Of a stretch of 64,000 nt of DNA, positions 16,101 through 53,340 are shown in pieces. Positions within the stretch are counted from its first letter, which is position 1; each line of letters begins with the position of its first letter. A model generated the notes under the pieces. It did no database searches and had not been told where the DNA came from. It saw only the letters and a list, made by a program, of their open reading frames with translations. The translations under genes were made by a program, and so were the position numbers. The stretch is from positions 152,025 through 216,024 of IMG/VR virus record IMGVR_UViG_3300043446_004437; one strand, 5' to 3'.

Positions 16101-16244
16101 CAAATCTAAAATTTTTAAATTATCTGCTGGAGTTAAAGGTTTGTTAAAAAAATATGATAACCCAACACCTTTAGCGGGGACAAGATTGCCAATTTTGACA
16201 GCTTCTTCATTCCCTATGGTTGTTTTATTGTTAAATTTTTTCAT
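10104..16244 (-). CDS. large tail/baseplate protein with internal peptidoglycan-binding-like domain (2046 aa)
   Basis: ORF track; TAATG overlap with upstream gene; PG_binding_1-like segment (WRVGAKHPYVKYIK..AAVKEFQ..DGVVDSET) at about 13170-13465. Confidence 0.6.
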   Translation of the reverse strand: MKKFNNKTTIGNEEAVKIGNLVPAKGVGLSYFFNKPLTPADNLKILDLSDSIAENKIGTQNETKLFFANELGILQDQNGDTNFLSSDITISDAFLSKDFTTERIYSNSINENDFLHYYYVSRYFLMAPSGYAINDLEDYHDISYYKNLNIKVIDDQNKEYLDKNTSRRKYKILLDPYITKSNSTNTEIPYRIVVGFDSFEPINLKLIYDKIVLDEDGEVVSQTLRYVETVNAVPYYTEVAEEAAVMSKHSKKIYSIKKFNKKYSEIFSHNLNYNSYQVFVPRKALFDNRNYEVFNWRLVARVNQPINYNILDNSKDAEESGQIKQRTVNVGVLYDSSDADSLGNIQPYVFYRLEKSGFNMSNYVFQNPEIENKIWIQATGIGKPSKQEKRYWLVDIQSIESLENFDILSFSPTSALSEKATNLLKEYVTVQNGTLLVDASAYPGDKPLVFDGIKISNFQAQTTDTFYEYVESTILDENTTGGWNIDQTIFNNENYGIFGYKANNYRSITSVDSSKVFFNVGINSSTKRPAGAVFKFLSIGDKLSQGSIVCCSFPFLEYCNRVFHSGEKPNVLNENLDQSVYEQADYSLMPSFVEGPFKLLYNSLVYSLYSRNQATRKTDLRPSLYNFVGPWESSWVMDQDALMDDEKAKYFTNISSNSGVIQYARDLISDQDSIKKYYLKKVSESIPSSLAGQISSPGIVENNTDFYLEITNPDVVISSPSFSSSNLSDSKIQIASLENFPSSYFMYKILSKDEKIFAFTEKKSNKLYIPSGYGPYEVREMGEIKIGGNKTLNNSISPSSYFKSYPFRFATKYSTISTTEQGYAFAGSVKTKLNLLYKAKGALRSVKVIGTVTRNYAGTNRIIQHPAPDADPIIIEGYNVTDVPCVNIISGRQNELSGRLPVITDLSALNFKNFEYTWDVEAAAAGYPIETWRVGAKHPYVKYIKCVMQAAGLYNINKTSINAKTKVKEQPENNTTYTATLSAAVKEFQTKMKLGQMTVGLIPRVPLLYPPDGVVDSETKSLMAYVIKFWSKYEPIYYNNLLRLTEEHDVTRFVEAVFKQIEPSQINSGSSYRRISFTGNVSNSPSTIEDFIFFSIPDPENYQKVNKIKIKLEDAPWNKVKLVGYGYSAEDPIEGGQKRFAAKDIYKAYSVHKATNGVTLIDNNIEIDLAGVSTTACRNIFVRLQTDGKQLGGRWGNLAEGFGIVGITADLKTKDTSEPPKDTITDQPFDYNKVHQAFPSIEKPAVEELANYWLLDLDGNPDPNLSWSGNNLISSLNGHLIYTTLTNKFYVWDGTNNKWTEDIVSFFNPTPDELQEINPINLSLDEIERKIIYKDLVQTTDVYVNAIAYLTEQFENLSSLSEYSVDYNVGYLSGKNVLLNNFSYNYLGKAYSKTLTTPTPISDSALNNLLNEQIETDPSAIDSIQNNGLQINFANPVSVSIDNENSVEILSLKSKVNEQAANPNSICSISYYGNLPNNLDPQKQTCTGFKIKTSQTYYSNPKTYISAESILDSYSVINTDGDVIQKISSVTVNDGLILLCDSFGKPVGIPSPKQITDNIVTAGQSSIGAENIKYGYVSINNTTYENEGFVYGFYDRVKKEFLGKLISFNEIITRGVNNIYIGAMAFDADGNLDKAIDYIGAQSTNTYTPISLSPKMIAPVYSVKYKSSNAIKITEISNYISKKEPWPLRLTAGSFNKNILIPLNYAFFDWKSKYMGQVLNCTYDTSGSILANNFSRIFGHKNKDIKNEVPLIISTRKIQLRRTPVLMYTMPIEDGVESDVPAMLPAFTVYVRADEESTWLEVPFGDIKDFDAENGVIEFKTNIVVSSNLIKVDYTIKDNTIWVYQVEGKEIPLNPFLNKDQIDENKPLYIYLMPTKIEKYNVFPDPVVFEGPTSKSLINSRTPITEYANSYPVHFTYDKNIFNKSSNKYNPVALLIGAVYITDSNDGSSTNLYDIRIKGGGVAADITSYSELKQIKGINSYWDMHSMQPRVYPKGGYAIIRMPDAVKNNFKSLEEIYDIVNRNITAGVGFEIQNLDGAPWSIKNYE

Positions 16245-19200: not shown

Positions 19201-20941
19201 ATACGTAATTATATGTTTTTTCTTTAAAAATTATATTTTGTTTTGTTAAACCATTTGAATCTACAACAGATATATAATTCCATTCTGGACTTGCATCAGA
19301 ATTTTGTAATGAATTATTTCGTACCGCAAAATCGCTTCTTTCGTCTGGGTTAAAATTTGCATAGAAAACAGATGGCGTTGAGTATTGATCGTGTGCCGGC
19401 ATAGAAATTTCATAAACCAAAGATACATTTTCTATTAAGTTTGGATTAGGAATCTGCTCTGTATACTGAGCCATGTAAGAATAAGCAAGTTCTATTGGCG
19501 TGTAGTGGTCAGAAAATGTTTCGTTTTTAAAACCTTCAGCTTCAAAATACCCTTCGAACGAAACAGTTGCAAAATTTTCTTCTTGTATTTTTATTTCAAG
19601 GTCTGAAAAATCTCCAACACCCGGTTGGAAGTAACCGGTTAAAGGTGTAGCATTATCATAAATATTGGGTATATAGTTTACGCCTTCATTATTTAATCCG
19701 GCGTAGTCCCATATGTTTTCGTTCCATTTAGCGTACCCTAAATTAAATGGATATTTTTTATTTATATTTCTAACAAAATCATAGAAACTATTTTCTGGAG
19801 CTCCATTATCTGCTATATATGGAGTTGAAGATTCTATATCAATAATTTCTAATATTTCTGGCGTTGCCCCAATTGCATAAGAATCTGGCGTACTTGCATA
19901 CGCAGACCAAATATTTAATTCTCTTCTTAGAGTTCTTTTAAATCCATCTAAACCAACTGATGGAGGGTTTATATATGTGTCAAGTATTCTTTTTTTGAAA
20001 GAAAGATTTTCTTCCAAATATAATCTCTTTAATCCAACCCTTGCGCCAAATTCATCAAATATATTAAACAGCATTATGGGTTCTTGCAAAAACACAGAAC
20101 CATCTATTGTTAATTCATCAAATTTTCTTAAAGTTAATATTTGACTATCTAATAGATTATGGCAATAAACATAGTCTGTAGCTTTAGATGAATTAAAATC
20201 TTCTAAAGAAGATGCTTTAGCCAACTTTATCGTGTCCCCAACAAAGTTTAACGCTGCTGCGGGCACATTATAAGAAACATAAGCCCATGAAGGTGTGTCT
20301 ATATCTGCTGTGCTAATGAAACTGTTTATATTTGAAACATCTAATTGCGTACTAAAATCATCTAAATAATGTCCAACTAAAGAGTTTACAAACTTACCAC
20401 CAATTGTTATAGGAGTTGCCAATTCTGGCGTAGCTTGCTCTATTGAGTCTTCATATATATCCATCCATGTCGGAAATTTTTTCAAAATATTTCTAGCAGA
20501 GTCTGACACAACTGGCGTAACCGGTTCATGTATAGCTACGTTTACGTATAGCAAGAGGCCTAGCGTAGAAATATCTTCTACATCAGAAAATACAGTTAAT
20601 TCTATTTTAATATATGGTTTACAATTACTTAAGAAAATAGAATTAGAATTTATATTTAATGTAGATTTAAGCCAAGGACCATTTGGTAGATCTGATTCAT
20701 ATATTTGTAAAGTAAAAGTTGGCTGCTGTTCGCCGGGGACACTGGTAAATTTATGCTTAAAAGAAACTATATCAATTTTTGAGCTAGTATCTATAAACCT
20801 TAGAAAAGAAGGAGACGCTTCATCCCTTATTACTTCTCCATAATTCGTTACATACGAAGCGTACGGGTCTATCGGGGTTGAATGGCTAGAAGAAAAAGAC
20901 GGAGAAGATACTTCTGTTCCAACAAAAGTATAATCTCCGTA
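16244..20941 (-). CDS. baseplate wedge / fibre-attachment protein, main frame (about 1612 aa if joined to 20886-21083 by a +1 shift)
   Basis: Frame is open well beyond the track start (20554), up to 20941, reading GDYTFVGTEVSSPSF...GLLLYVNVAI. The motif FDEFGARVGLKRLYLEENLSFKKRIL resembles wedge proteins that follow baseplate-J genes. Confidence 0.65.
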   Translation of the reverse strand, partial: YGDYTFVGTEVSSPSFSSSHSTPIDPYASYVTNYGEVIRDEASPSFLRFIDTSSKIDIVSFKHKFTSVPGEQQPTFTLQIYESDLPNGPWLKSTLNINSNSIFLSNCKPYIKIELTVFSDVEDISTLGLLLYVNVAIHEPVTPVVSDSARNILKKFPTWMDIYEDSIEQATPELATPITIGGKFVNSLVGHYLDDFSTQLDVSNINSFISTADIDTPSWAYVSYNVPAAALNFVGDTIKLAKASSLEDFNSSKATDYVYCHNLLDSQILTLRKFDELTIDGSVFLQEPIMLFNIFDEFGARVGLKRLYLEENLSFKKRILDTYINPPSVGLDGFKRTLRRELNIWSAYASTPDSYAIGATPEILEIIDIESSTPYIADNGAPENSFYDFVRNINKKYPFNLGYAKWNENIWDYAGLNNEGVNYIPNIYDNATPLTGYFQPGVGDFSDLEIKIQEENFATVSFEGYFEAEGFKNETFSDHYTPIELAYSYMAQYTEQIPNPNLIENVSLVYEISMPAHDQYSTPSVFYANFNPDERSDFAVRNNSLQNSDASPEWNYISVVDSNGLTKQNIIFKEKTYNYVYENTKLTPTSSNIDISKASSIKIVNSAKWDQDAQTYIYNSTPHYRVTFNESTTSSSHSNSISVANIQISTPNINYINSNFKIGSNLYGSTPVIKFSNVIEDFVIVNKDNDPDITADEIVYVSDLTKNLFIPPNATPVNLIIENKKIDSKPIFTIDEIYREPGQPLTALDFSQNYGGKSYFPLLDTQYFVPSSPNIIINSYSVNDLTTPIYSNYFESATFNYNTLPHVLAVTNNVQSTPNYPFKSPVWIPTEEGELRTTPMIKGYLDYLGNIYRSDESAEGNRSPFDQNYRDKFLNSYYLTREDFGLTKNSNNQYFITEIKPISLNNKVFLEASQETVIREDSPLFKLNQDSSKIIKELYDSSNQLFYFSPIEINASLDKGYKNSFTNSINSNPITMNTGWLNLEEEQNYVYAKPIVDIYTGKYFEVELSQTPTQGAPVLISIKDGDVNFDLEEMAFPDSATPGKVVFNNEETVTCSEHGALYVSHLNIKDIVIKDNYTGNILTKSPLNPEFYVWTMGGDASTPGIIEAFLSGEFYISTSDLMISDDVSYSYQVSKIEVYNNLATAENILVPGRQYTVSYSLERAFYVDRNVYSETKDQYISKIYFSATPSSATPVYEITYESALQETSTPTGINLNRQDLPIDDGYIYLSKDEYEFSTAVVEISPQQISKNIDDIIYLTITSYDLAGNFKPYQTFAISSDLLEIEDEYLTTNKYGIAKTKIRFTGVPTSSLYASVLVSGVSYPSEYAHENSESGGFITGSNIEFIDNYNPSYRLKASGSKLIIESDGISENYIYGSVLENNNPPSSTPIIYWRKARTLYDVLNTIEYSSYSAMPGRNFISGYTHADSNGKFSIGPFYSQPRNNPGYWFVAVETELASTPSLQPNPLHGDVVYWYERFNNVQYLDEQTVLPSYYINTVDDKDIIATPNFKFNLIKQDFGATPKSKLNWVPPRWLPINYYEQYQMGLFGSTPNVIATPNYIVGYEES

Positions 20942-21100: not shown

Positions 21101-22348
21101 TTAATCTAGCCAAACAGAATATTCTGAAGTAACTCCATTTTCTGGATGTACAAACATCAAATGCTGACAAGGTCTACTCATCGAAGAAAAGTACTCTTGA
21201 GCATAAGTATTGTAACTTTCTGGCGAACCAGAAATTCTTAGCATTGAGCTTCCTATTGTTACTTTAAATTGTTGGTGGTAATGGCCCATAAAGACATCAT
21301 CAAAATGCTCGGGTATTGCTCCGTCTTTCCAGCCCATTATTTTTTTATAGTAACCATGGAATGCGCTAGGCGAAGGCAGTTGATCTCCATGGATTAAAAG
21401 GCTACTATAGTTTCCTATAGTATCTATCGCGTACCAGTTTCTTTCACCTCTACCATCTGGTATATTAAAAGATATTCTTTCTTCATCGCCAACTATTAAC
21501 TCTATTATCTTATAGAGCATTCTGTCCATGTTGGTTTCTGGATCGTGTTGTTTTCTTGCTCTACCGCCAACTGCTCCGTGGTTTCCTATAACTCCAGTAA
21601 CATGAACGTGATTAAAGTTTTCTAATGCGACTTTGACAAAGTTTCCTAATATTCTGGGACCATTAATTGCAACCTGTCTATACAGACCTGAATCTATGAG
21701 GTGACTCTGTCCAGGAAATATTTCTTCTCCTTCAACAATATCTCCAAGAAGCCAAATATGTAAATCATTTACTTCATGATCCATTCTTTGAATTTCGGTT
21801 ATCTCCAATAATTTTTCTGTGTATCTTTCTATTCTTTCTTCTAATACATTTGTATTATAATCTGGAGTTATTTTCCCCATCTGCCAGTCTGCAAAAACTG
21901 CTACTGCTGTTTCAGGTAATTTTTCTTTATTTCTTTTTAAGTTTGGTGCTTTAACTTTTGGAAATTCAAAACTAGAAAACGCATCATACGCAGCCTCGTA
22001 AACTGCTCTTACCACTTCTTCTTGAACATTCTTTAATGTTTCAACTCTTTTAGCTAATTTTTTATTCTCTGATCTTAAAAAATCATTTCTTGAATCTGAT
22101 ATACTAGAAAGCAAATCTTCCGTTTCTGCTTCGTACTCTTCTTTTATTTCTATATTAGAAGACTGTACGTACATTGAATCTTTTTCATTTATATATTCAA
22201 TTACTTCTTCTTCTGAAATTTCTTCTATTGAAGAAGTCTCACCTAAAACATCTCCGTGTCCTTCGCCAGTAAAAACTATATTTTTAGCTTCACCTATATT
22301 TGGTGCGCGAACTATGTGTTTATTTGTGACAACAAAAGTTTTTTTCAT
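21101..22348 (-). CDS. calcineurin-like metallophosphoesterase (415 aa)
   Basis: Ordered motifs FADWQ, LGDIVEG, GNHG, IHGD, MGHYH; acidic/coiled-coil N-terminal extension. Confidence 0.85.
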   Translation of the reverse strand: MKKTFVVTNKHIVRAPNIGEAKNIVFTGEGHGDVLGETSSIEEISEEEVIEYINEKDSMYVQSSNIEIKEEYEAETEDLLSSISDSRNDFLRSENKKLAKRVETLKNVQEEVVRAVYEAAYDAFSSFEFPKVKAPNLKRNKEKLPETAVAVFADWQMGKITPDYNTNVLEERIERYTEKLLEITEIQRMDHEVNDLHIWLLGDIVEGEEIFPGQSHLIDSGLYRQVAINGPRILGNFVKVALENFNHVHVTGVIGNHGAVGGRARKQHDPETNMDRMLYKIIELIVGDEERISFNIPDGRGERNWYAIDTIGNYSSLLIHGDQLPSPSAFHGYYKKIMGWKDGAIPEHFDDVFMGHYHQQFKVTIGSSMLRISGSPESYNTYAQEYFSSMSRPCQHLMFVHPENGVTSEYSVWLD

Positions 22349-27089: not shown

Positions 27090-30000
27090 TTATTCAGTCC
27101 TTATTAATTGTTCGGAACTATTTATCACAGACTCTGATTCTGTTAAAAGATCTTTAGTATAAACAGAGGTGCCATAATTTCTTGTTACTAATTCCCAGTT
27201 AAGGGTTGCTGGAGTCCCATCTTCATAGTACTCATCCCAAAGAATTAATGGCCATTTTGACGCATTGTTATACAAATTATACAGTCTTAGAACTTCAACA
27301 AGAGCGTAAAATGTCCTCACCCTTTCTTCCCCCCTTGGTTCACCTTCGGAAAGTCTAGATGTATATTCGTTATTGTCCCAATCAAATTTGCTATTTAGTT
27401 CATATGTTTTGTTAAATACATAAGAAAAATTAACATAAAAAGGTTCTTTTAGATCAAAAAATTCTTCTTTAAATTTAAATACTATTTGATTAACATCAAA
27501 TTTATAATTTTTCATAAGAGCAAAAACATTTTCTTTACTTTTTTCCACGGCATCTGATGGAACATTGTAGAAGACTGTCCCTAATGTTCTTTGATACCTT
27601 TCTTTTAGATAATTAATTCTGTTATCATTCCCATTTGGCTCAAAATCTTCTTCTGTCTCAAATTTGTTTGGAGACGTTTTAGATTGTTTTATTCTCACAA
27701 CAAAAGTTTTATTTTCTAAAACCGTTTTTACAAACTCGGCCGCCAACATACCGGGGCTGCCAAAGTCTTCAATAATCAAGTCGTTTGTTATTGGCTCGGA
27801 ACTATATCTTGTTTGTTTTTCATCGTCTAAATTAAAAATTAATTTATTATCTATTGGCGTTATTGTATTTTGTAAATTTGAATCGTAAAACGCGCTTACA
27901 GGACCATAAAGATCAATCGAAGATTGAGTTGGTGTTAATTCATATGTAAAATAGTTAACAATATTTGGATTGAAATTTGGATCAACCACTTGAACCGATA
28001 GAACATTATGAGTTCCGTCAAACGGATAGCCAAGATTTTTGATTATTACTTTATCACCAGCAACAAGTTGATTGTTTTGTATTTTAGCTGGAATTAAATT
28101 ATTCTCTATGGCTCTAGGTATTGGATATCCGTACGCATCTTTTATAATCTGTTCATTGTCATCATAGTTGTATCCGCCAGTAACCAAGGTTGCGTAATAT
28201 TTATTGTTAACTAGTTTAATATTTTTTCCTATTATCCAACCATTTTTTGATGTTTCAGTATAACCAATCTGGATTTTTTCCGAAACGTTTATGCCATCTA
28301 AACGTACTGTAAATTTTACATTTGGATTTAAAACATCTTCTACATGTATTGTATCTCCGTCAGTAACCCCAGAACCGTTTAGCCCACTGCCCTTACTTAA
28401 AGTGCACAGAACTTTAAAGAAAGGCTCAAAGCCTGTTTTTTCTGGACCGAGGCCAGACAAACCCAATACCTGCGCATGAACAAGAGCATTTTCATAACTT
28501 GCATATCTTACAAAAGCTGAGGTATCTTTTTCCGACCAACCAAGACTCTTCATCAAATCATTTGTTCTTATATATTGGTATCCTTCCGCCGAACGAGTTT
28601 TTGTTCTGACTCCCAATATACCAGGAAGAAGGCTTATAGAATGATATCTGCCAACAACCATCCCCTGATTATAAGACAGGCCAGCTTCCATTGGTTGACC
28701 ATTTCTAGTAAGGTATTGCACATAGCAGCCGTGTTGATCTAGAAGGTTATTCCTAACCCATTTCCAAGCTTTCCAAACCAATGGCCCAAGAAGCAAACCA
28801 GCTCCAGCCACTATAGGCGCTGCTCCAACTCCCACTGCTGTGCCTGCAATAGCGGCACTTCCCGCAGAAGCTATCCCGTATCCGGCCGTACCTATGCCAA
28901 CTGCTAAACCAGCTGTGCCGGAGATAACTCCAGCTATTGCCGATGCATCTACCTGACCGTTATTGCCATTTTTCTGAGCTTGTTGTCTTATTGCGTCTCC
29001 GAGATTTGAATTTGTAAATCCAGATGCAGTTACATTAGCAATCACATCTTTAACTAAAGCAGAAGACCCACCAGTAAACTGCATGCCGCCAATTAGCTGA
29101 GGACTAAGTGAGTTACCCAACGCATCGAGGGATATTTCCCCACCCATTGTTAAGCCAGCATTTCCTGCTCTTAGGGAATCTAAGTATATTCTAGTATCGT
29201 TTCTTACGGTTTGAACATTCAACCAAGAATGCAGCCAAGAAGTCATAAACCATCTAGCTGGATCATTAATTGTAACAAGTGCATTAGGAGTTATAGATGT
29301 AACGTATCCAAGCTCGGAATTAAAATGATGCACGACTTGTTCAACTTCAAACATGCCATACATTCTTTCGTATATATCAGCCAAATATACTAAGTCATGT
29401 GGTCTTATGTCTGGGTTACCAAGAATTATTATCTCTCCACTATATATATCTTTTACCGATTCCCTCAAATGACTTAACGCAACCCTCTTGGCGCTCAATT
29501 CATCTGGTGCCCCAGTAACGTTTTTTGAAATACCTCTTCCAGTTTCAAATGGGTGTAATAGTGGATGTAAGAAACCAAAAAATCCGCTACCAACAACGTT
29601 GTCAAAATAAATTCCAGTTTCTACTGTAGTTTCTACCTGCCTATCTGCTGGAGCGCCTTTGTCCAAGGAAACTGTTACTGGGTATTTACCGTCAGAAACT
29701 GCTGTTATTGTAGTTGAAACACCAGAATTTTCTTGTATTTGATTTGAAATTATATGAGAAAAAGAACTTAGGTAATGTATTCTTTGGAATGGCTCTCTTA
29801 TTTCCACAACTGGTTCTGCGTACTCTCTTGTAAATGGGTTATCCACTGCCCTTAGTAGAGAGCCTGGTCGACCAAGTTGGTAATAAATAGAATCGTTTAA
29901 AGCTTTGTTTAAAATATTTGCTTGTCTTGCAAGTATGGAACTTTGTGAAAGACCATAGCCAGTTTGCAACATATTGAGTCTAAATACATTAAATAGTGCA

Positions 30001-33000
30001 GATAAGCTATCTGTTACTGCATTGAAGATTTGTCCAATACTTTTATCGTAAAAATCTCCTAAACTATTTAAAGTCTTACTTGCTAAATTTGTTGTGCTAT
30101 TTCCTTCGCTCTTGTTTTTATAAAGTAGTTCTAAAAACTTTTTCTTATCTTTAGCGTAAGTATTTCCTGGGAAAATATATGCTTGGAAAATTTTATCTAT
30201 TGGCTTAAAAGACCAAACATCCCTATTAGGATCATTGTTTAAATAATCTATTTTTCTATCTGGTTTCAAAACTAGCCAAGCTCTTGCATACGCATCAGAC
30301 CAAAGAGCCTGCCTAAATAAACCAACAAGATAATAAAACAAATCTTGAGGACACTTTATTATATTTCCCAGGTCTGCTTCTTCAACATCTTGACCATATA
30401 TATTTCTCATCTGAGTAACATCAAATAAATTTGATTTTAGTAAACTTATCTTTTCTACTGTAAGAGCATTAAAGTATTCTATTAAACCACCATTTTCTAT
30501 AGGCGCATCAATAAAATTCTTTCTTGAAAATTCTATTGCTTCTTGTTGAGAAGAACTTTTTATATCGCCAAATAATAAACTAAATTCATCTATAGCAGTG
30601 CTGCCTGTTTCCCCAAATTTTTTATAAACACCAAATTTTTCTGGCAACGGTTTACCGCCAAATATGTTTTGTATTTCTTCTGGGAAAGGAGTTGTATCAT
30701 TCCAATTCATCAAGTATGTATCTGCAAATATTTTTTTGACACTATCATAAGTATGATAACCATATCTAAATTGGTCCCAAATTTGTTGAGCTTGAGCTAA
30801 TGTTCTACCATTGCCAGCTATAACAGTTGTGTTTATATCATAATCTTCATCATAAAATTTTCTTGATTCAACAGAAGTTGAATCTTGATTTGAAAAAACT
30901 GAGGCAAACTCTACTCTACCGCTAGAGCTATAATCTTTGTCATTTGACTCACTCTTTAATAAATTAATTCCATACGTTACATCTTCTAGATTTTTTCTAC
31001 TTTCATCTCCAATTGGCTTTTGAATTAACGAGTAATAACTCTTGTAATTTCCACCAAATCTATAATCAGTTTCGTTGCTGTTGTTAGCGCTTTCGGGTAC
31101 GTATTGCCTTATTGCCTCCATGCTTGGGTTCTTTAACAGCGCGTAGAGATCGTCTGTCTTATTTGTTGAAACCCAATTTCCAAAACCAATCACAACAGAA
31201 TCTTCTGTCTCAATTCCAGGTGACCCAGGATTAAATGGTTGCAGTTCCTGACCAGTGTTTGGTGATTTTTTTATCTTAAAATTTTTGATAGGGACAACAG
31301 CACTGAATGCTACGCCAAGCGGGATCGTGTTCGGCACGAACGCAAAATAGCATTCTTCTACATCTGGTATTGGTGCGTAACCTTTTTTGTCGTAAATATA
31401 CAAATCTTGTTTTTCTGTATCTTTTTTTACAGAAACATCATAACTTAATATATCTAAATAAAAGGCTGCGTCGGGTGAAACAACTGCATCAACATCAGTT
31501 GATAAAGTTTGTATGACATCTGTTCCGTTTTGGTTTTCCTTGCTCAAATTCGTAGTTTTATTTTCTCCCCAAAGAAAATATGCCGGCTTACACACAACTG
31601 CACTTCCGTTGCCACCGTTGCCAGATGGATTATAAACTAACACATGCATATTTTGATAGTCTTTAGCTTCACCATAAACAGGAGCTTCTTCACTATCAAA
31701 ATAATATTTTTTAAATTTTTTAACCAGTGCGTTATCTGACACATTAACATTATAAGGCCATCTCATGGCTATATAGAATTGTTCTTCTAGATCATTTTTT
31801 GGCGGTTCCCATTCCAAATAGGTAAAAGGATTGGCTCCACCAAATTCTGGATTTAATTCTAAAATTTTAGGATTATTTTGGGAAGATATATTTTTTTCTG
31901 GTGTTGGCATTGTTACCTGTATAGCCTGTTCGTTTGCCACCTTGTCATATGCTTCTGCGTTAAGTGAAAAATCGAGAGGATTATTTAATATTTCATAAGC
32001 TATTGAACCAGATATACTTTGAGAATCTTGATAATTTATATCTGATATAAATAATTCTTTAAATTCTGATCCATAAATTTTTTCTACTTTATTTAATATA
32101 AAGTTTTTATGTGTTGAACCTTTGTCTGTTCCTTGATACCCTAGTTCTGCTAAACCATATTGGAATGAATACGTATCCAAAAAGTTTTCATCGTTTTTTC
32201 TAGTTGTAAAAAACGGAAATCTAAATCTACTAGGAAGTTGTTGTATCTGAGCATGCTTTGTGTTTCTTGTGTCTGAGACAATTTGTTCTCTAGTTCCCAC
32301 TGGCAAGTGAAAGCCCATTGTAACATTGCCTTTTGATTTTGGTAATTTTACAATTATATTTCCATTTGAATCTGTTATTTCTTGGAAATCTTTGTCCATA
32401 AAATTAATTAATATTTTTTGTGACTTCAAATATCCAGCTGTATTAAATATACCTTCTGCATTTTTTTGTAATGCAGCTATTTGATTCAACGCCTCAAGCG
32501 GTTCAGTCCCTCTTAAAAACGCTTCTGCGTCTGCGTAAGGATTTATCGATTTATTAACATCTGTCATTATTTGCATTAAATCAAAATCGGGTTCATTTAT
32601 TTGAGGAGGTATTATCCCTAATTCAGCTGCTTTTTCATCACCAGGATAACCAGTGGTAATAGGGACAACGCCAGATGTATACAACCAGTGAGGTTTGCCG
32701 TAAAAAATTGTTGACCTATCCTCAAATGGTCTAACTGCAACTATATAATTTGGAAGAAGTCTTGCGCAAGTTTGAAACAAATCCCAAACAGATCTCATAT
32801 ACGTTTGAGCTCTAAAAGAAACTTCATCAAACCCAGGCATGTCGTCATCAGAGTTTGGGCTTATTATACCTAGCGTCCTAAATATATTATTACCGCCTCT
32901 GCCACTTAAAACACCCAATAACCCAATGCCTACTCCTACGGTTCCAACAATTGGACCACCCGCTATAAGCATTGCGCCGCCTAACCCGCCTAAAGTAAGA

Positions 33001-36000
33001 CTCCTAAATAACGAAGCGCTTCCTTGAGCGTCTCTTATAGCCCCACCCTTTGTAGCTTGGTCAACAACAGCTGAGGCGTTTGGATCTCCAGAATCGTATT
33101 TAGACATCAAGCTATTCCAAGATCTATCAGACAATCTTGATAGGTATTCAAGTCTAGGATTTGGTTGATCTTCTGGCGTTATAGACGCTACGCTTGTCCA
33201 GCCATCACCTAAGTCCCCGCCTAAAAATTGTGCTATACCAGTTCCATTTCCTGGATATATATTTCTTTTAAATATTTCCATATCTCTTTGTGCGGAAAAG
33301 TTTGACCAAAGCTGACCCATCAAAGAAGCAACGGGATATCTAAACTCTTGCACACCTACGCCAACCATATTCAAAGCTGATTGACCTATGGCAGAACCGC
33401 TCATTTCACTTGCAGCCCTATGTGCATCTGCAATAGAATCAACCATAGCATAATGCTTTGTTGCCTCGGCCTCACTTAATGGCTGGTATAACATAGAACC
33501 AAAATGTCTTATGCCAAATTTATTCTCTGAAAATACTAATCCTCTGTATGCATTAGCAACGCCTTCTCTGAATCTAGAAGTGCCCATAGATAGCAACCTA
33601 ACCATAAGATCTCTTGGCTCTGAAAGCCACAATCCAGTGTTTATGCCACCATCTATTTTGCCGCTATCGCCTTTTTTATTTGTTGAATTTACAACTGCGC
33701 CAAGTTCTATGGCATCTGATTGAGCGGTTACGGTAACAACTTCTCCGTATTCAACTTGAGTTATGGTACCGTTAAACAACGTTTGCAAACTATTTGGGTT
33801 TGAACCATACCCGCCTCTTAGGTGAACTCTTACGCCAGGTTTTAAAACTATATTTTCTATATTTACAACATAATCATTTTTCATATGAGCCAAAAGATTT
33901 CTGGCTTTATTCAGAGTATTATCAAGTATTGACCCTATACCAGCAGAAACCGACGCACCAAGTGGCGAATCTGCGCTAAATATATCTGAAGATGCGGTTT
34001 TAGTTAGTTTTGAATAAAGATTAGATACTCTAAAAATTAGAGTATCTCCTAAAAGATCTTCTGAGGAAACAACAGAAAAATCTACAATTGATTGTAAACC
34101 ATAAAAATTATCAAACAATTTTACGCCAGCAAAATACCCACCTTCATCTATCAACCATAGCATGTATGTTGGAAACGCTCGTATCATTCTTCCAGAAACG
34201 TCACGGTATTGTGTGTCTACAAGCATTTTTTCCCAGTGCATGTTTACACTTTTTGGCGGGTCTCCTTTTCCTGAAGACCACTCAGGAACATTTTGATCAC
34301 CATGAGAAATTGGACTACCATAATCTGATAATGGAGTCATACCAGCAACAGCGGAACGTGTCGTCCCCAAAGCTGGGTTAGCGTGTTCATCTATTGGTAT
34401 TGGTGCTAATTCATATACTTTAGAATTTTTTTGTACTTTTACTCCATCAATTGTTAAATAAAATCTTCCATTTTTTTCTGTATCAATATAACCAAAATTA
34501 GTTCCATAAGCAGTTACGAGCATTGCTGGAATTTTATTAGGGTCATTTGGGTCTTTAATTGGCAGCATGTATATATTGGCGTGCGCGTTTAATTCTTCTG
34601 GAATAAAACTTATGTCACTTTCGTCAGGAAGACTGTATTCTCCAGCCAAAGCCATTTCTACTTCTTTATAAGTTTCAATACTTGATGAAGATAAATTGCC
34701 TACTTGATAAGGAGCAGAGAATATTTTATTTACTATTTCAGGTTCTTGTTTTTCCACAAAGTCAATGTAATCGGTCAACACTTGCGAACTAGTTTCTTTT
34801 GCTATTTCTGTTGCACCGCTGGGATCATAAGGATACTTTATCCAACTTTCAAAAGCTTTTAAGAAAATTTTATAATCTATTCCATTTTCTTTTAACCAAT
34901 TAGTTAATGATCTAAGTTTTATCTTTTTTTCTTCTATATCTGAAGCAGAATATTCTCTAATAAACTGTGGTAAATATTTGTACGCTTTGGCGACTTGTTG
35001 TGATTCAGATACAACTTCATCTGTAGGCCCAAAAATAATGGGCTTAACCTGATTTGAAACATTATAAACAATATCTTTGTCAAACATTTCAAAAGATCTA
35101 AAATAAAAATCTGGATCTAAAGTTCCAACTGTTTCATTTTTTGAATCTTTTACCTCAAGCGGCAGGTCTGGATATGCATTAAACGCGCCCCACATTTGTT
35201 TAATTCTTAAAAATGGATTTCTTTTTGAAGAAAAATTATCTATAAAATCTTTTTGTTGAACAGAACTTAATTTTTCTCTTGTTTGTTGGAAGACATCAAA
35301 GTCCATAAGTGTTATGTTTACTTGGTAAACATGCGGATAATCTGGGACTGTCGAAACAGAATAATTTGACGGCATAACATACTTGATGCCACACAGCGCC
35401 GTTATAATATTTTTTATCCCCATAAATCCTAATACTCCGCTAGCGTGTTCTAATCTTGCAAGAGCATTTACGTGATCAAAAATCTTTTTAATTTTAGCTA
35501 ATTCTTTTTCGCCAACTACAGTCATTGATATATTGATATAAGAATCTTTCCCACCTATATGTTGATAGGTTGGCTCATCTTGCATTTGCAGTTGCAGCTT
35601 AGCTAAGTTATTGCCAAGAGAAACGCTAACACCAGTTACCGTTACAGAAGCTGGATCTAAGTCCACTTTCATCATCGGCACTTCCCATTCCCTAAATTGG
35701 AAAGAGCCAGATTTTGCTCTAATTGCTTCCATTAAAGCTTGTATCGGACCACTAGAATAGAACCTTTCATACACAAGCACATTGAAAGCATCGCTCACTT
35801 GATTTTTTATTTCTTTTTTAAGATTTTGATACGCTTCAGAACCGAGTTCCCCATCTGCAGGTATCGTTATCTTTTGTTCTTTTGCTTTTTTATTTACTAA
35901 TGTATTTGTTGTTTGATCAAGATAAGCTTTTGAACTTAAAGCTATTTTTTTCATATACTCTTTTACTGCGGTCAGCGTTACGCTTGTGAGAGTTTCGCCG

Positions 36001-38543
36001 TTGACGATATATGTAGATGGGCCTATTCCTGCGGGTACTTCGTTGCTATTAATGTCTTCTATATATTTTTTTTCTGAAGAAGATAAACCTTTGTTTTCTA
36101 TTTTAAAAACTTTTACAAGATAAGCGTATACTTTTTCTTTTACTTCTCCATCTGAATTGCCTGCTACTAAAATATCAATTGAGTCTTTTAAGATACTTCT
36201 AATGTTTCTATTATATTGGCCATTAATAGCTAAGTTGTAAGTATTTGCTAAAGTTACGCCATAATCAGAAGCATTGTTGACATTGATGCCAAAATAGTTT
36301 AATATCCTTGACCAAAAATCTTCGTTTTGATCAGACATAAGTTCTTCATTATTTTGTCTAAAAGAGCTCATATCTGGCAAGAATATTTTTGTTTGAGATT
36401 CAACCGGTATATAAAAAGAAATATTATTTCCATTAGTCCATTCGCTGTATATATTTGTAGCTAATTGGCTCTCATTTAAATCAACAGTATTTATGCCGTA
36501 AGATTTTTCTAATGAACCAGAAGAATTAGGTACTGTGTTTGCAAATGGTTCTTTTTGGTCTGCGCCTTTGACATCTGTTTGCTTTTGCAAAAATTCTCCA
36601 TTAACATAATTACTTAGAACTCCAGCTGCTTTGCCCATGTATTGTCTGTACTTACCCCAATGTATCGCTTGATTAAAATCTGTTATCATTGGCATAAGTG
36701 GTTTATGGTTAAAGTTTAATAACTCAATATCTACCGCTAACGCAAATGGGAAATTTGGTATGGTTTGTACTTGCATATTAGAAAGTGCAACTGCCGTAAT
36801 GCCGTGAACGCTATTTAGATAAGAATTTTTAACCGGAAGAAAAGGAGAATATTTAAAAGCGGCCACCATCCCTCTAAGAGAAGAAAGAAACTTATCTATT
36901 TTTTTATCTGAATCACCGTTAGAAGAAAAGTCTATAACAAAATTATCTTTTAGTTGGATTCTAGATGCATCTTCTATTGATATGCCCCAAATTTCTTCAT
37001 AGTTAGGAAAGAATAGTCTAATGGAAATAGAGGTTTCTTTATAGCCAGAATTAAATTTTGGAGAATTTTTTTGCCTTAATGCTCCTCCTGTTAAACTGCC
37101 TGTTTTAAATGCGGTATTAATGTTAATTGATAATGGTGGAACATAAAAGTTTGCTGCACCTAATCTAAAATGGAAAATATCAGGAGACTGTGGAGCTATA
37201 TTTGCCCTATAAGGAGATTTCTGTAAAACTTCTCTGATTCTTTCTGCGGTGTTTTTAAAATTCTTTGGATCATTTGGCCCATAAAAAACTAAAGAAAATA
37301 CATCTTGACCACTTCTAGCGCCCAAAGCTGTTTGCAAGGATTTCAAAAAATCTTGCATGTTATTAACCGTATCTTCTTCTCCTCCTCCAGTGCCGTCGTT
37401 TGAATAGTCACCTGTTACAGCAAGTGCGTCAAAGAAAAAGGTAACCAAAGACGGGAAATAAATATTTACCATTGACAATGTAATTGGATCTCTTGAGATC
37501 CTTTGAACAGTAAAAATTAATTGATCCAACCAAGCTTGATCTTGCGTTGCATTAAAATAATCAAATGCTGACTTTGTAACGGTTGCTGAACTGGACAATC
37601 TTTTTTCCCCAAACTTAGCTATATCAGATGCATAAGCCGCAAGTGTTAAAAGACCAGAATCTTTTATCCTTAAAAAAATTCGCTCTAATTGATCTGCGTC
37701 AATTGCTCCACTTTTGGGGTCAATTGCTGGCTCGTTGCCTTCAAGTGGTTTAAAAGCTCTATAAAAGCCAGTCCAATCAACTGCGGCAACGTTTCTATCT
37801 GGTGCAGCGTTTCGTCGCACACTATCCAATTTTTCTTTTACAAGTGCTGTATCGTATTGCCCATAAACCACTTTAAACACTTCTTCTAAATAATTCAAGC
37901 CAGTGCTTGCGCCAGCACCTAATTCATCGCCCCCTAAAGATAATTGATCATTTAACCAAGAGAGTTCTTGTAAAGTTATTGTTCCTAAATTTTCGTTTTT
38001 TGTTTTTGATGAACTGTAATATTTTTTCCAAATTTTTAATCTATTATATAATACGTCTGCGGCTACTATAACAGTTGAAAAACTGGCACTACCCAAAAAT
38101 GCTTTATAAATAAAAAAATCTTCTCTTGCCTCTTCTGCGTTTAAAGAATATTTACTGCGGTAGAGGCCGGATGCGTCATCGACGATAGAAGAATACCTGG
38201 TTAAGATAGAATCATCTAATTCAGCTAACGGTTGTTTTATCCCAGTCAAATAATATCTTATACCAACGTTTGCCGCAAAAACGCTAAACTGATCTTTTTC
38301 AGATAAGTTCAAAGAAAATTTAGGATAAGACTCAAGAACTTGATCTGTTACATATGCTGGCAGTTGGCCATAATTAAAAAAGGTGTCCAACTGCTCAATG
38401 CTAACTGATTTGTTAACATTATCTGGATTTAAAAAATTTATTATTTTTTCTATATAAGAAAGATTCATTAAATAATTTAAATATTTATATGCGGCAGAAT
38501 CTATTGTATGTTCTAGAAAATAATTAACACTTGGTTGAGCCAT
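27090..38543 (-). CDS. giant baseplate hub protein (gp27/VgrG-like core) with C-terminal thermonuclease-like domain (3817 aa)
   Basis: Hub motifs PGVRVHLRGGYG..LFNGTITQV..VTVTAQSDAIEL and GEIIILGNPDIRPHDLVYLAD..FEVEQVVHHF; SNase motifs VTDGDTI, VRLDGINVSE, ERYQRTLG. Confidence 0.75.
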   Translation of the reverse strand: MAQPSVNYFLEHTIDSAAYKYLNYLMNLSYIEKIINFLNPDNVNKSVSIEQLDTFFNYGQLPAYVTDQVLESYPKFSLNLSEKDQFSVFAANVGIRYYLTGIKQPLAELDDSILTRYSSIVDDASGLYRSKYSLNAEEAREDFFIYKAFLGSASFSTVIVAADVLYNRLKIWKKYYSSSKTKNENLGTITLQELSWLNDQLSLGGDELGAGASTGLNYLEEVFKVVYGQYDTALVKEKLDSVRRNAAPDRNVAAVDWTGFYRAFKPLEGNEPAIDPKSGAIDADQLERIFLRIKDSGLLTLAAYASDIAKFGEKRLSSSATVTKSAFDYFNATQDQAWLDQLIFTVQRISRDPITLSMVNIYFPSLVTFFFDALAVTGDYSNDGTGGGEEDTVNNMQDFLKSLQTALGARSGQDVFSLVFYGPNDPKNFKNTAERIREVLQKSPYRANIAPQSPDIFHFRLGAANFYVPPLSININTAFKTGSLTGGALRQKNSPKFNSGYKETSISIRLFFPNYEEIWGISIEDASRIQLKDNFVIDFSSNGDSDKKIDKFLSSLRGMVAAFKYSPFLPVKNSYLNSVHGITAVALSNMQVQTIPNFPFALAVDIELLNFNHKPLMPMITDFNQAIHWGKYRQYMGKAAGVLSNYVNGEFLQKQTDVKGADQKEPFANTVPNSSGSLEKSYGINTVDLNESQLATNIYSEWTNGNNISFYIPVESQTKIFLPDMSSFRQNNEELMSDQNEDFWSRILNYFGINVNNASDYGVTLANTYNLAINGQYNRNIRSILKDSIDILVAGNSDGEVKEKVYAYLVKVFKIENKGLSSSEKKYIEDINSNEVPAGIGPSTYIVNGETLTSVTLTAVKEYMKKIALSSKAYLDQTTNTLVNKKAKEQKITIPADGELGSEAYQNLKKEIKNQVSDAFNVLVYERFYSSGPIQALMEAIRAKSGSFQFREWEVPMMKVDLDPASVTVTGVSVSLGNNLAKLQLQMQDEPTYQHIGGKDSYINISMTVVGEKELAKIKKIFDHVNALARLEHASGVLGFMGIKNIITALCGIKYVMPSNYSVSTVPDYPHVYQVNITLMDFDVFQQTREKLSSVQQKDFIDNFSSKRNPFLRIKQMWGAFNAYPDLPLEVKDSKNETVGTLDPDFYFRSFEMFDKDIVYNVSNQVKPIIFGPTDEVVSESQQVAKAYKYLPQFIREYSASDIEEKKIKLRSLTNWLKENGIDYKIFLKAFESWIKYPYDPSGATEIAKETSSQVLTDYIDFVEKQEPEIVNKIFSAPYQVGNLSSSSIETYKEVEMALAGEYSLPDESDISFIPEELNAHANIYMLPIKDPNDPNKIPAMLVTAYGTNFGYIDTEKNGRFYLTIDGVKVQKNSKVYELAPIPIDEHANPALGTTRSAVAGMTPLSDYGSPISHGDQNVPEWSSGKGDPPKSVNMHWEKMLVDTQYRDVSGRMIRAFPTYMLWLIDEGGYFAGVKLFDNFYGLQSIVDFSVVSSEDLLGDTLIFRVSNLYSKLTKTASSDIFSADSPLGASVSAGIGSILDNTLNKARNLLAHMKNDYVVNIENIVLKPGVRVHLRGGYGSNPNSLQTLFNGTITQVEYGEVVTVTAQSDAIELGAVVNSTNKKGDSGKIDGGINTGLWLSEPRDLMVRLLSMGTSRFREGVANAYRGLVFSENKFGIRHFGSMLYQPLSEAEATKHYAMVDSIADAHRAASEMSGSAIGQSALNMVGVGVQEFRYPVASLMGQLWSNFSAQRDMEIFKRNIYPGNGTGIAQFLGGDLGDGWTSVASITPEDQPNPRLEYLSRLSDRSWNSLMSKYDSGDPNASAVVDQATKGGAIRDAQGSASLFRSLTLGGLGGAMLIAGGPIVGTVGVGIGLLGVLSGRGGNNIFRTLGIISPNSDDDMPGFDEVSFRAQTYMRSVWDLFQTCARLLPNYIVAVRPFEDRSTIFYGKPHWLYTSGVVPITTGYPGDEKAAELGIIPPQINEPDFDLMQIMTDVNKSINPYADAEAFLRGTEPLEALNQIAALQKNAEGIFNTAGYLKSQKILINFMDKDFQEITDSNGNIIVKLPKSKGNVTMGFHLPVGTREQIVSDTRNTKHAQIQQLPSRFRFPFFTTRKNDENFLDTYSFQYGLAELGYQGTDKGSTHKNFILNKVEKIYGSEFKELFISDINYQDSQSISGSIAYEILNNPLDFSLNAEAYDKVANEQAIQVTMPTPEKNISSQNNPKILELNPEFGGANPFTYLEWEPPKNDLEEQFYIAMRWPYNVNVSDNALVKKFKKYYFDSEEAPVYGEAKDYQNMHVLVYNPSGNGGNGSAVVCKPAYFLWGENKTTNLSKENQNGTDVIQTLSTDVDAVVSPDAAFYLDILSYDVSVKKDTEKQDLYIYDKKGYAPIPDVEECYFAFVPNTIPLGVAFSAVVPIKNFKIKKSPNTGQELQPFNPGSPGIETEDSVVIGFGNWVSTNKTDDLYALLKNPSMEAIRQYVPESANNSNETDYRFGGNYKSYYSLIQKPIGDESRKNLEDVTYGINLLKSESNDKDYSSSGRVEFASVFSNQDSTSVESRKFYDEDYDINTTVIAGNGRTLAQAQQIWDQFRYGYHTYDSVKKIFADTYLMNWNDTTPFPEEIQNIFGGKPLPEKFGVYKKFGETGSTAIDEFSLLFGDIKSSSQQEAIEFSRKNFIDAPIENGGLIEYFNALTVEKISLLKSNLFDVTQMRNIYGQDVEEADLGNIIKCPQDLFYYLVGLFRQALWSDAYARAWLVLKPDRKIDYLNNDPNRDVWSFKPIDKIFQAYIFPGNTYAKDKKKFLELLYKNKSEGNSTTNLASKTLNSLGDFYDKSIGQIFNAVTDSLSALFNVFRLNMLQTGYGLSQSSILARQANILNKALNDSIYYQLGRPGSLLRAVDNPFTREYAEPVVEIREPFQRIHYLSSFSHIISNQIQENSGVSTTITAVSDGKYPVTVSLDKGAPADRQVETTVETGIYFDNVVGSGFFGFLHPLLHPFETGRGISKNVTGAPDELSAKRVALSHLRESVKDIYSGEIIILGNPDIRPHDLVYLADIYERMYGMFEVEQVVHHFNSELGYVTSITPNALVTINDPARWFMTSWLHSWLNVQTVRNDTRIYLDSLRAGNAGLTMGGEISLDALGNSLSPQLIGGMQFTGGSSALVKDVIANVTASGFTNSNLGDAIRQQAQKNGNNGQVDASAIAGVISGTAGLAVGIGTAGYGIASAGSAAIAGTAVGVGAAPIVAGAGLLLGPLVWKAWKWVRNNLLDQHGCYVQYLTRNGQPMEAGLSYNQGMVVGRYHSISLLPGILGVRTKTRSAEGYQYIRTNDLMKSLGWSEKDTSAFVRYASYENALVHAQVLGLSGLGPEKTGFEPFFKVLCTLSKGSGLNGSGVTDGDTIHVEDVLNPNVKFTVRLDGINVSEKIQIGYTETSKNGWIIGKNIKLVNNKYYATLVTGGYNYDDNEQIIKDAYGYPIPRAIENNLIPAKIQNNQLVAGDKVIIKNLGYPFDGTHNVLSVQVVDPNFNPNIVNYFTYELTPTQSSIDLYGPVSAFYDSNLQNTITPIDNKLIFNLDDEKQTRYSSEPITNDLIIEDFGSPGMLAAEFVKTVLENKTFVVRIKQSKTSPNKFETEEDFEPNGNDNRINYLKERYQRTLGTVFYNVPSDAVEKSKENVFALMKNYKFDVNQIVFKFKEEFFDLKEPFYVNFSYVFNKTYELNSKFDWDNNEYTSRLSEGEPRGEERVRTFYALVEVLRLYNLYNNASKWPLILWDEYYEDGTPATLNWELVTRNYGTSVYTKDLLTESESVINSSEQLIRTE

Positions 38544-53322: not shown

Positions 53323-53340
53323 TTTACCTAACCAGTCTTT

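What the first reader, a model, noticed from the sequence alone, without database searches (positions are those of the whole stretch)
27560..28375. Thermonuclease (SNase)-like domain at the end of the hub, interrupted by a ~190-aa insertion
Seen: GVTDGDTIHV..VRLDGINVSEK (~28375-28275), then an insertion, then GMLAAEFVKTVLENKTFVVRI..ERYQRTLGTVFY (~27760-27565). Established: staphylococcal nuclease has DGDT, VRL.GID.PE and D.YGR.L; here the Asp, Arg, Glu and Arg equivalents are kept while the GID Asp is Asn. VgrG proteins carry C-terminal effector domains. Inference: an evolved-VgrG-like hub delivering a nuclease or DNA-binding module, or clearing extracellular DNA at the tail tip; activity is uncertain.
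Basis: partly seen in the sequence, partly recalled or inferred. Interest (0 to 1): 0.6.

Follow-up and report, generated by a model that had tools for sequence, protein, structure and literature searches.

The report
Split nuclease-like domain on phage hub
The last ~430 residues of a giant phage baseplate-hub protein are a real but very diverged staphylococcal-nuclease-type domain, split by two inserted modules, with an active site that selection has kept; it is a fixed part of this hub family, not a swapped effector.

Summary
Observation confirmed. That ORF is a homologue of the Bacillus phage 0305phi8-36 baseplate hub, in a 216-kb uncultivated myovirus.

- Pfam, PDB sequence searches and Foldseek all miss the domain.
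- The family profile aligns in register with the phage's own stand-alone PF00565 nuclease (hhalign E 1.8e-6).
- The fold is in three pieces. A 172-aa beta-barrel follows the catalytic Glu.
- All 142 complete relatives keep the domain, so it is not a swapped effector. Only the first insert varies (20-235 aa, four unlinked sequence families).
- The Asp/Asp/Thr/Arg/Glu/Arg equivalents are 6 of only 18 near-invariant columns. Exactly these six decay together in one 29-member clade. Asn and Asp alternate at the Asp40 site.

Most likely it is a working Ca2+-type nuclease or phosphodiesterase fixed to the hub, which also has a structural role; the variable loop module is probably surface-exposed. Activity and location are inferred. 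New variant of a known kind.

The parts
27090..38543 (-). Giant ORF (3817 aa, P0001), the baseplate-hub homologue that carries the domain at its C-terminus
   Evidence: ORF list and translation. tblastn of aa 1439-1954 hits ORF147 'baseplate hub protein' of Bacillus phage 0305phi8-36 and its relatives. PHROG 20474, E 2e-132. The gene lies between a 2193-aa ORF and the sheath-initiator-like and Baseplate_J genes.
28773..28946 (-). Gly/Ala-rich hydrophobic, membrane-segment-like pair (aa 3200-3257), about 130 aa upstream of the nuclease-like domain
   Evidence: Hydropathy scan. This region is better conserved among relatives (50-60% identity) than the domain itself.
28275..28376 (-). SNase segment 1 (aa 3390-3423): strands 1-3 with D3395, D3397, T3398 (DGDT), R3414, N3419 (Asp40 site) and E3422
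   Evidence: strands at model residues 9-36; in register with the DGDT and R..G.NTPE motifs of the phage's own PF00565 protein.
27759..28274 (-). Insert 1 (aa 3424-3595): lineage-specific 172-aa beta-barrel module in the loop after the catalytic Glu
27564..27758 (-). SNase segment 2 (aa 3596-3660): helix 1 and strands 4-5, with R3652 (Arg87 equivalent)
   Evidence: (helix at model 213-225, strands 231-234 and 269-274).
27264..27563 (-).
   Evidence: Length is 98-132 aa in all 121 aligned relatives. Helices at model residues 279-378. Only non-specific helical matches.
27144..27263 (-). SNase segment 3 (aa 3761-3800): conserved W-P..W-D-E-Y-Y..D-G and L-N-W-E-L-V motifs, then the last helix and strand of the SNase fold
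   Evidence: Invariant or near-invariant columns. Aligned to the C-terminal helix and strand of the stand-alone SNase. The structural matches span model residues 7-418.
32682..34235 (-). Hub-core region (aa 1437-1954) homologous to 0305phi8-36 gp147
   Evidence: It is 58-96% identical among relatives, far more conserved than the C-terminal domain.

Best explanation
SHOWN. The C-terminal ~430 aa of the 3817-aa baseplate-hub protein are a highly diverged domain of the staphylococcal-nuclease (thermonuclease, OB-fold) superfamily. Its core is coded in three pieces. The pieces are separated by (i) a hypervariable insert in the loop right after the catalytic Glu, here a 172-aa beta-barrel, and (ii) a family-wide ~100-aa helical insert after the Arg87 strand. 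The domain is a constant part of a large family of 3300-4080-aa hub proteins of ~200-kb uncultivated myoviruses. The active-site set Asp-Asp-Thr-Arg-(Asn/Asp)-Glu-Arg is kept in about four fifths of them, including this one, and was lost as a block in one clade that nevertheless keeps the domain. INFERRED. In this phage the site is functional. It binds a divalent metal (Asn or Asp serving as an oxygen ligand) and a phosphodiester, with Glu3422 activating water and Arg3414/Arg3652 holding the phosphate, as in SNase. The hub therefore carries a tethered nuclease or phosphodiesterase at the tail tip, or released with the hub at infection. The domain also has a catalysis-independent structural role in the baseplate, which explains why it survives where the site has decayed. 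The variable loop module is most likely solvent-exposed and serves adhesion or decoration, as similar barrels do in phage tail proteins. The substrate (host DNA/RNA, extracellular DNA or another phosphodiester polymer) and the site of action are not determined.
For: Fold:
- AF2 model of aa 3385-3817 has mean pLDDT 80.4.
- ESM Atlas holds a 'putative nuclease' cluster, 100% PF00565, at TM 0.61 by target, 103 aligned, rmsd 2.4 A.

Homology:
- The phage's own genome has a stand-alone PF00565 protein (49.7 bits, E 7e-14).
- The family profile with insert columns removed aligns to it over all three segments in register (hhalign Prob 89.7, E 1.8e-6, 101 columns). With inserts left in, E is 3.8e-5. 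The tool's own hhalign gives E 1e-4.

Selection on the site:
- Of 142 complete domains, 99 read D-D-R-N-E-R, 12 D-D-R-D-E-R, 1 D-D-R-G-E-R, and 30 are degenerate.
- On the tree the loss needs only 2 events (a clade of 29 plus one row), while Asn/Asp toggles 11 times.
- Only 18 of 268 columns are >=99% conserved outside that clade. Six of them are the SNase Asp19, Asp21, Thr22, Arg35, Glu43 and Arg87 equivalents. Exactly those six change inside the clade, and the other twelve stay.
- The stand-alone SNase also has Asn at the Asp40 site, invariant in 49 distinct relatives.

Fixed domain, variable loop.

SNase mechanism (Ca2+, Arg35, Arg87, Glu43-bound water): PMC8436206.

Precedent: the BtI1 prophage homologue of 0305phi8-36 hub gp147 carries an SNase domain (PMC2147016).
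Against: - Pfam PF00565 does not reach threshold on the query (no hit). It scores only 12.8 bits in one relative against a cut-off of 21.
- PDB phmmer and hmmsearch and Foldseek find no SNase.
- The canonical Ca2+ ligand Asp40 is Asn in this phage.
- I had no model coordinates, so the 3-D geometry of the site was not checked.
- One clade keeps the domain without the site, so catalysis is dispensable for at least part of its role.
- Nothing here shows virion location, substrate or activity.
Confidence: 0.6

Rival explanations
1. Pseudo-enzyme. The SNase-type fold is used only as a structural or binding block of the baseplate, for example as an OB-fold that holds another tail protein, the DNA end or a surface polymer, and as a scaffold that displays the loop module. 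It does not cleave anything, in this phage either.
For: - A 29-member clade and one further sequence keep the whole domain after losing the catalytic Glu, the Asn/Asp and Arg87.
- The twelve best-conserved non-catalytic residues, mostly in segment 3, are kept everywhere.
- The canonical Asp40 is Asn in 99 of 142.
- The SN-like domains of Tudor-SN and extended-Tudor proteins, which are among the best structural matches, are binding modules rather than nucleases (my own knowledge).
Against: - A pure scaffold has no reason to keep exactly the six SNase site residues at >=99% across sequences that are otherwise 30-40% identical, nor to lose them together once.
- The Asp40 site accepts almost only Asn or Asp, both oxygen ligands, with 11 switches between them.
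- The phage's own highly conserved stand-alone SNase uses the same Asn.
Confidence: 0.3
2. Polymorphic effector on an evolved-VgrG-like hub. The C-terminal nuclease is one of many interchangeable toxic cargo domains, swapped between related phages and injected to damage the host.
For: - At deep evolutionary distance the hubs of this lineage do carry different enzymatic ends. 0305phi8-36 gp147 has transglycosylase, NlpC/P60 and M23 domains, and its BtI1 homologue has an SNase domain at the N-terminus (PMC2147016).
- A membrane-segment-like pair precedes the domain, which would fit translocation.
Against: - Within the family there is no swapping. All 142 complete relatives, including those found with the hub core as the only query, end in the same domain.
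- The domain diverges gradually along with the hub (tree).
- No alternative C-terminal domains were seen. The proteins lacking it are truncated, most at 2100-3200 aa.
Confidence: 0.05
3. Chance resemblance. The DGDT and R..G.N..E motifs are coincidental and the region is not an SNase-type domain.
For: No Pfam, PDB-sequence or Foldseek match.
Against: The top three of 48,161 structural comparisons are SN domains. An Atlas PF00565 cluster matches at rmsd 2.4 A. hhalign gives E 1.8e-6 over three segments in the right order and register.
Confidence: 0.02

Closest known systems
Staphylococcal nuclease / thermonuclease family (Pfam PF00565), including the stand-alone 132-aa SNase of this same phage (L002:1468-1866, minus strand)
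   Same: Same OB-fold barrel with flanking helices. Same order of motifs (DGDT; R..G.[D/N]..E; helix; R-x-L strand; final helix and strand). Asp21, Arg35, Glu43 and Arg87 equivalents are present. Asn at the Asp40 site is shared with the phage's own SNase.
   Different: About 430 aa instead of about 135. Two inserted modules split the fold. It is below Pfam's threshold. It is fused to the end of a 3817-aa virion protein rather than being a small free or secreted enzyme. The extra invariant W-P..W-D-E-Y-Y motif has no SNase counterpart.
Baseplate hub gp147 of Bacillus phage 0305phi8-36 and its BtI1 prophage homologue (Hardies et al. 2007, PMC2147016)
   Same: Homologous hub core. The hub is decorated with enzymatic end domains. 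The BtI1 homologue was noted to carry an SNase-related domain, whose purpose the authors could not explain.
   Different: gp147 ends in peptidoglycan hydrolase domains. The BtI1 SNase domain is N-terminal and was recognised by ordinary annotation. Here the domain is C-terminal, split by two inserts, undetected by Pfam, and fixed across a large family. The protein is also much larger: phrog_20474, which matches it, has a 1954-position profile.
Tudor-SN / extended Tudor domains (SN-like fold interrupted by an inserted Tudor domain)
   Different: They are eukaryotic, with no sequence relationship shown here. The inserted domain is a Tudor barrel at another position in the fold, and those SN-like parts lack the catalytic residues (both from my own knowledge, not tested here). 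Here the residues are kept.
Evolved VgrG / tail-associated lysin type hubs and 'evolved' Dit proteins with inserted binding modules
   Same: A tail-tip or hub protein extended by an enzymatic domain, and loop-inserted beta-barrel modules in tail proteins. The insert's central motif recurs in tandem in a 1006-aa protein ending in an SPP1_Dit domain. An Atlas cluster with SPP1_Dit plus E1_FCCH matches the insert-bearing part of the model.
   Different: The enzymatic domain is not exchanged between relatives. The variable cassette sits inside the enzyme domain itself. All matches for the insert are weak.

Membership tests
SNase / thermonuclease superfamily (PF00565) | Five-stranded OB-fold barrel with the SNase helices, in SNase topology | tested here: met
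SNase / thermonuclease superfamily (PF00565) | Match to the Pfam model above its gathering score (21 bits) | tested here: not met
   No hit for P0001 or its C-terminus at E<=1. The best hit in eight insert-free relatives is 12.8 bits, E 0.18. A six-frame search of the genome finds only the stand-alone gene.
SNase / thermonuclease superfamily (PF00565) | Statistically supported sequence homology to a bona fide member | tested here: met
   hhalign of the family core against the alignment of the phage's own PF00565 protein: Prob 89.7, E 1.8e-6, 101 columns, three segments in register. E 1e-4 over the first segment with the tool's own run.
SNase / thermonuclease superfamily (PF00565) | Catalytic Arg35, Glu43, Arg87 and Ca2+ ligand Asp21 | tested here: met
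   R3414, E3422, R3652 and D3397 are present. They are >=99% conserved outside one clade.
SNase / thermonuclease superfamily (PF00565) | Ca2+ ligand Asp40 | tested here: not met
   N3419. The site is Asn in 99, Asp in 12 and Gly in 1 of 112 intact sequences. It is also Asn in the phage's stand-alone SNase.
SNase / thermonuclease superfamily (PF00565) | Ca2+-dependent endo/exonuclease activity giving 3'-phosphates | not testable with these tools
   Needs expression and assay.
Polymorphic C-terminal effector of an evolved VgrG-like hub | C-terminal domain differs between otherwise close hub relatives | tested here: not met
   All 142 complete relatives keep the same domain, including those retrieved with the hub core only. 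The domain tree shows gradual divergence.
Polymorphic C-terminal effector of an evolved VgrG-like hub | gp27/gp5-type hub core | tested here: inconclusive
   Homology to 0305phi8-36 gp147, annotated as hub and assigned to gp27 by HHsearch in PMC2147016. My own PDB searches gave only weak hits (9gtr_q Gp5/Vgr OB-fold, E 0.11). No Pfam hub family.
E1_FCCH-like / endosialidase-type beta-barrel (for insert 1) | Clear structural or sequence match to the family | tested here: inconclusive

The most novel reading that the evidence does not exclude
The hub-terminal SNase-like module is a tail-tip phosphodiesterase that is aimed by its own loop cassette. The exchangeable beta-barrel inserted next to the catalytic Glu would bind a host surface polymer, such as matrix DNA or a phosphodiester-linked glycopolymer, and present it to the active site. 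Host specificity would then be tuned by swapping a module inside an enzyme domain of the hub rather than in a fibre. In the clade with the decayed site, only the binding and structural role would remain.
Probability: 0.15. Interest if true: 0.7.

Novelty: new variant of a known kind. Interest (0 to 1): 0.5.

Why it matters
Virion-borne enzymes at the tail tip are nearly always peptidoglycan or polysaccharide hydrolases. A nuclease-type domain on a hub was remarked on once, as a puzzle, in a distant relative in 2007. Here the same kind of domain is a constant, selected part of a very large family of giant hub proteins in abundant uncultivated ~200-kb phages, and standard annotation does not see it. 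The family offers a natural experiment: about 110 sequences have the site intact and about 30 have it decayed in the same scaffold, which makes the question 'what does a nuclease do on a phage baseplate?' directly testable. It also shows the loop after the SNase catalytic Glu acting as a natural insertion platform that accepts 20 to 235 residues. That is of interest for protein engineering and for reading host-range cassettes in metagenomic phages.

Tried and rejected
- Pfam on the whole protein and on the C-terminus: no hit.
- Pfam on eight insert-free relatives: one sub-threshold SNase hit.
- PHROGs on the C-terminus: only an unknown-function family at E 0.013.
- tblastn of the C-terminus against 50,697 phage records: no match.
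- PDB sequence search with the protein and with the family profile: only chance hits.
- Foldseek of the 433-residue model against the PDB: nothing with E<=0.001, and no SNase listed. The fold is split by inserts, which probably defeats local 3Di alignment.
- ESM-Atlas feature search with the insert: scores of 0.80, uninformative.
- The search for related loci with the stand-alone SNase: only 86-97% identical copies, so the SNase profile used for hhalign is shallow.
- Search for a paralogue of the insert in the phage's own genome, to test intragenomic transfer: none.
- hhalign between the four insert families: E 0.009-0.47, all on one short motif, so common origin of the inserts is not shown.
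- One hit of the big search (P0165) is a low-complexity repeat protein and was discarded.
- Idea rejected: that the OB-fold is the gp5-type OB domain of the spike. The SNase-specific motifs, helices and top matches argue against it.
- Complex prediction, the reads tools and the metagenome and genome contig scans were not used, as no claim needed them.
Full report
**Context.** The window is the last 64 kb of a 216,024-bp IMG/VR virus record that CheckV rates complete. Its GC content is 34.7%. All large ORFs lie on the minus strand and form a myovirus tail and baseplate module:
- a tail sheath gene (54126-55406);
- a 2193-aa ORF (43848-50429);
- the 3817-aa ORF 27090-38543 (P0001);
- then a sheath-initiator-like gene and a Baseplate_J gene.

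The only named relatives are the Bacillus jumbo phage 0305phi8-36 group and Moorella phage MTATph1. tblastn of P0001 aa 1439-1954 falls on 0305phi8-36 ORF147, annotated 'baseplate hub protein'. PHROG 20474, which is built on that protein family, matches at E 2e-132. Hardies et al. assigned gp147 to the T4 gp27 hub family by HHsearch (PMC2147016). Calling P0001 'the hub' therefore rests on this homology and on gene order. My own PDB searches of hub parts gave only weak hints.

**The observation.** The translation holds the quoted strings at aa 3392-3423 and 3598-3659, that is window 28275-28370 and 27567-27752. D3397, R3414, E3422 and R3652 stand at the SNase Asp21, Arg35, Glu43 and Arg87 positions, and N3419 stands at Asp40. 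The intervening stretch is 172 aa, not ~190.

**Is it an SNase domain?** Sequence-to-model methods fail:
- no Pfam hit;
- nothing in PDB by phmmer or by a family HMM;
- one sub-threshold PF00565 hit (12.8 bits, cut-off 21) among eight relatives.

Three independent lines then agree.
2. Atlas. The shape search returns a bacterial 'putative nuclease' cluster, 100% PF00565, at TM 0.61 by target, with 103 residues aligned at rmsd 2.4 A over query residues 7-418.
3. Homology. A six-frame PF00565 search of the phage's own genome finds a stand-alone 132-aa SNase about 4.5 kb before the window (49.7 bits, E 7e-14). The family profile, with the two insert regions removed, aligns to this protein's alignment over 101 columns in three segments in the correct order and register (Prob 89.7, E 1.8e-6). 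With inserts left in, E is 3.8e-5. The tool's own run gives E 1e-4 for the first segment.

They do assemble.

**Anatomy.** The fold is in three pieces, not two.
- Segment 1 (aa 3390-3423) holds strands 1-3 and four of the site residues.
- Insert 1 (aa 3424-3595) follows the catalytic Glu directly, at the position of SNase's flexible loop.
- Segment 2 (aa 3596-3660) holds helix 1 and the strands with R3652.
- Insert 2 (aa 3661-3760) is a helical module of 98-132 aa, present in every relative.
- Segment 3 (aa 3761-3800) holds the last helix and strand. It is preceded by a W-P..W-D-E-Y-Y..D-G motif that is invariant in the family and has no SNase counterpart.

About 130 aa upstream lies a Gly/Ala-rich hydrophobic pair (aa 3200-3257). 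A similar segment lies at aa 1849-1881.

**Relatives: fixed domain, variable loop.** A search seeded with aa 3300-3817 found 174 giant proteins. A second search seeded only with the hub core (aa 1400-2000) found 364. In total 142 sequences have a complete C-terminus, and all of them carry this domain. The ones that lack it are truncated, most at 2100-3200 aa. The hub core is 58-96% identical among them and the domain only 27-93%. This is not the pattern of a polymorphic, swapped effector.

Insert 1 is what varies. It is 20-42 aa in 83 of 121 sequences, 103-135 aa in 21, 168-176 aa in the query's 11-member clade and 215-235 aa in 6. By BLAST the long inserts fall into four unlinked families, and one of them holds an internal duplication (P0025). 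On the tree the length class changes at least six times, and the query's insert defines one well-supported clade.

**The insert.** Modelled alone (A2, 11 sequences, pLDDT 74.9) it is a closed beta-barrel. Its matches are:
- against viral models, cyanophage tail and short-tail-fibre proteins at E 7e-3 to 3e-2.

An exhaustive HMMER search of 1.84 billion representatives returns only four hits. One is a fragment of the same clade and one is a low-complexity artefact. The other two are large proteins that carry five to seven tandem copies of the insert's central motif, and one of these ends in an SPP1_Dit distal-tail domain. The Atlas also lists a viral cluster with SPP1_Dit plus E1_FCCH over the insert-bearing part of the model. 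There is no paralogue in the phage's own genome. Profile comparison does not link the four insert families significantly.

Taken together, this is a small barrel of a type that recurs in phage tail proteins. Each line is weak, so its function (adhesion or decoration) is an inference.

**Is the site alive?** Among the 142 domains, the six-position signature (SNase positions 19, 21, 35, 40, 43, 87) reads as follows:

| Signature | Count |
|---|---|
| D-D-R-N-E-R | 99 |
| D-D-R-D-E-R | 12 |
| D-D-R-G-E-R | 1 |
| degenerate | 30 |

On a tree built without the insert columns, loss of the site needs two events, a clade of 29 plus one sequence. Asn and Asp at position 40 toggle 11 times.

The key test avoids circularity by removing the clade by phylogeny rather than by state. 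Of 268 domain columns, only 18 are >=99% conserved in the remaining 113 sequences. Six of the 18 are the equivalents of SNase Asp19, Asp21, Thr22, Arg35, Glu43 and Arg87. Inside the decayed clade exactly these six change (Thr to Glu, Glu to Ser/Pro, Arg87 to Lys, then Asp and Arg35 drifting), while the other twelve remain conserved.

So the SNase site residues behave as one selected unit that was released once. That is the signature of a working ligand-binding or catalytic site in the intact lineages, including this phage. It also shows a second, catalysis-independent role that keeps the domain. The Asn at position 40 is no sign of decay:
- the position accepts almost only Asn or Asp;
- the phage's own stand-alone SNase has Asn there;
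- that protein is 86-97% identical across 266 viral contigs, with Asn invariant in 49 distinct sequences.

In SNase, Ca2+, Arg35, Arg87 and a water held by Glu43 carry out the reaction (PMC8436206). That Asp40 substitutions are among the milder ones is my recollection of the older mutagenesis literature and was not checked here.

**Mechanism.** Shown: the fold, the homology, the split architecture, the constancy of the domain, the variability of the loop and the coupled conservation of the site. Inferred: the domain is a metal-dependent nuclease or phosphodiesterase tethered to the hub, and it doubles as a structural part of the baseplate. Also inferred: the loop module is exposed, because only exposed loops tolerate 20-235 aa of unrelated sequence, and it serves binding.

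Where it acts is open. A Ca2+-type enzyme fits an extracellular or periplasmic site of action. The preceding hydrophobic pair would fit membrane insertion of the hub's end during infection. I put about 0.6 on the main explanation, 0.3 on a purely non-catalytic role in this phage too, and little on the swapped-effector and chance readings.

**Comparison and novelty.** An SNase domain on a hub of this ancient lineage was noted in 2007 for the BtI1 prophage. There it is N-terminal and was recognised by ordinary annotation, and the authors called its purpose not obvious. The present case differs in several ways. The domain is C-terminal, interrupted twice, invisible to Pfam and fixed in a family of at least 142 giant hubs. 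It carries a hypervariable cassette next to the catalytic Glu, and there is a natural contrast between intact and decayed sites. It is a new variant of a known kind, of moderate interest.

No restricted material was met.

Noticed in passing
outside the window: G000:C1:147252-147506 (-); ORF at L002:1468-1866 (-): The same phage encodes a stand-alone canonical SNase (132 aa, PF00565 49.7 bits), also with Asn at the Asp40 site. It is 86-97% identical in 266 viral contigs, far more conserved than the hub's domain.
   Followed up: yes
window 28773-28946 and 32901-32999 (-), aa 3200-3257 and 1849-1881 of P0001: Gly/Ala-rich hydrophobic, membrane-segment-like stretches lie inside the hub protein, one pair just upstream of the nuclease-like domain. 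They recall the membrane-active segments of tape-measure or ejection proteins.
   Followed up: partly
window 21101-22348 (-): A 415-aa ORF directly after the Baseplate_J gene hits PHROG 284 'exonuclease' (E 6e-44) and, weakly, a minor-tail-protein PHROG, but no Pfam family. It may be a second nuclease-like or phosphoesterase-like protein in the baseplate cluster.
   Followed up: no
window 52591-53355 and 53402-54103 (-): Two adjacent paralogous ORFs (254 and 233 aa) just downstream of the tail sheath gene both hit PHROG 9206, labelled 'major head protein'. Their position suggests tail tube or tube-like proteins rather than capsid.
   Followed up: no
window 43848-50429, 10104-16244 and 16244-20554 (-): Three further giant ORFs (2193, 2046 and 1436 aa) sit in the tail module. 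The first two match no PHROG family at E<=0.001, and the third has only a weak 'virion structural protein' hit. The 2193-aa one sits where a tape-measure gene would be expected.
   Followed up: no
relatives P0025:3441-3942, and P0166, P0167: The insert of P0025 (235 aa) holds two copies of the short motif G-x-x-[IV]-x-[IV]...-[DN]-G-x-x-x-V. The same motif occurs 5-7 times in tandem in a 2128-aa protein and in a 1006-aa protein ending in an SPP1_Dit domain. It looks like a small repeatable barrel module shared among phage tail proteins.
   Followed up: partly
relatives P0065, P0069, P0076-P0078, P0081-P0084, P0088, P0097, P0111, P0131, P0152-P0159 and others: A monophyletic clade of 29 hub proteins keeps the whole SNase-like domain but has lost the catalytic Glu, the Asn/Asp and Arg87, with further decay of Asp21 and Arg35 in sub-clades. 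This is a natural inactive control.
   Followed up: yes
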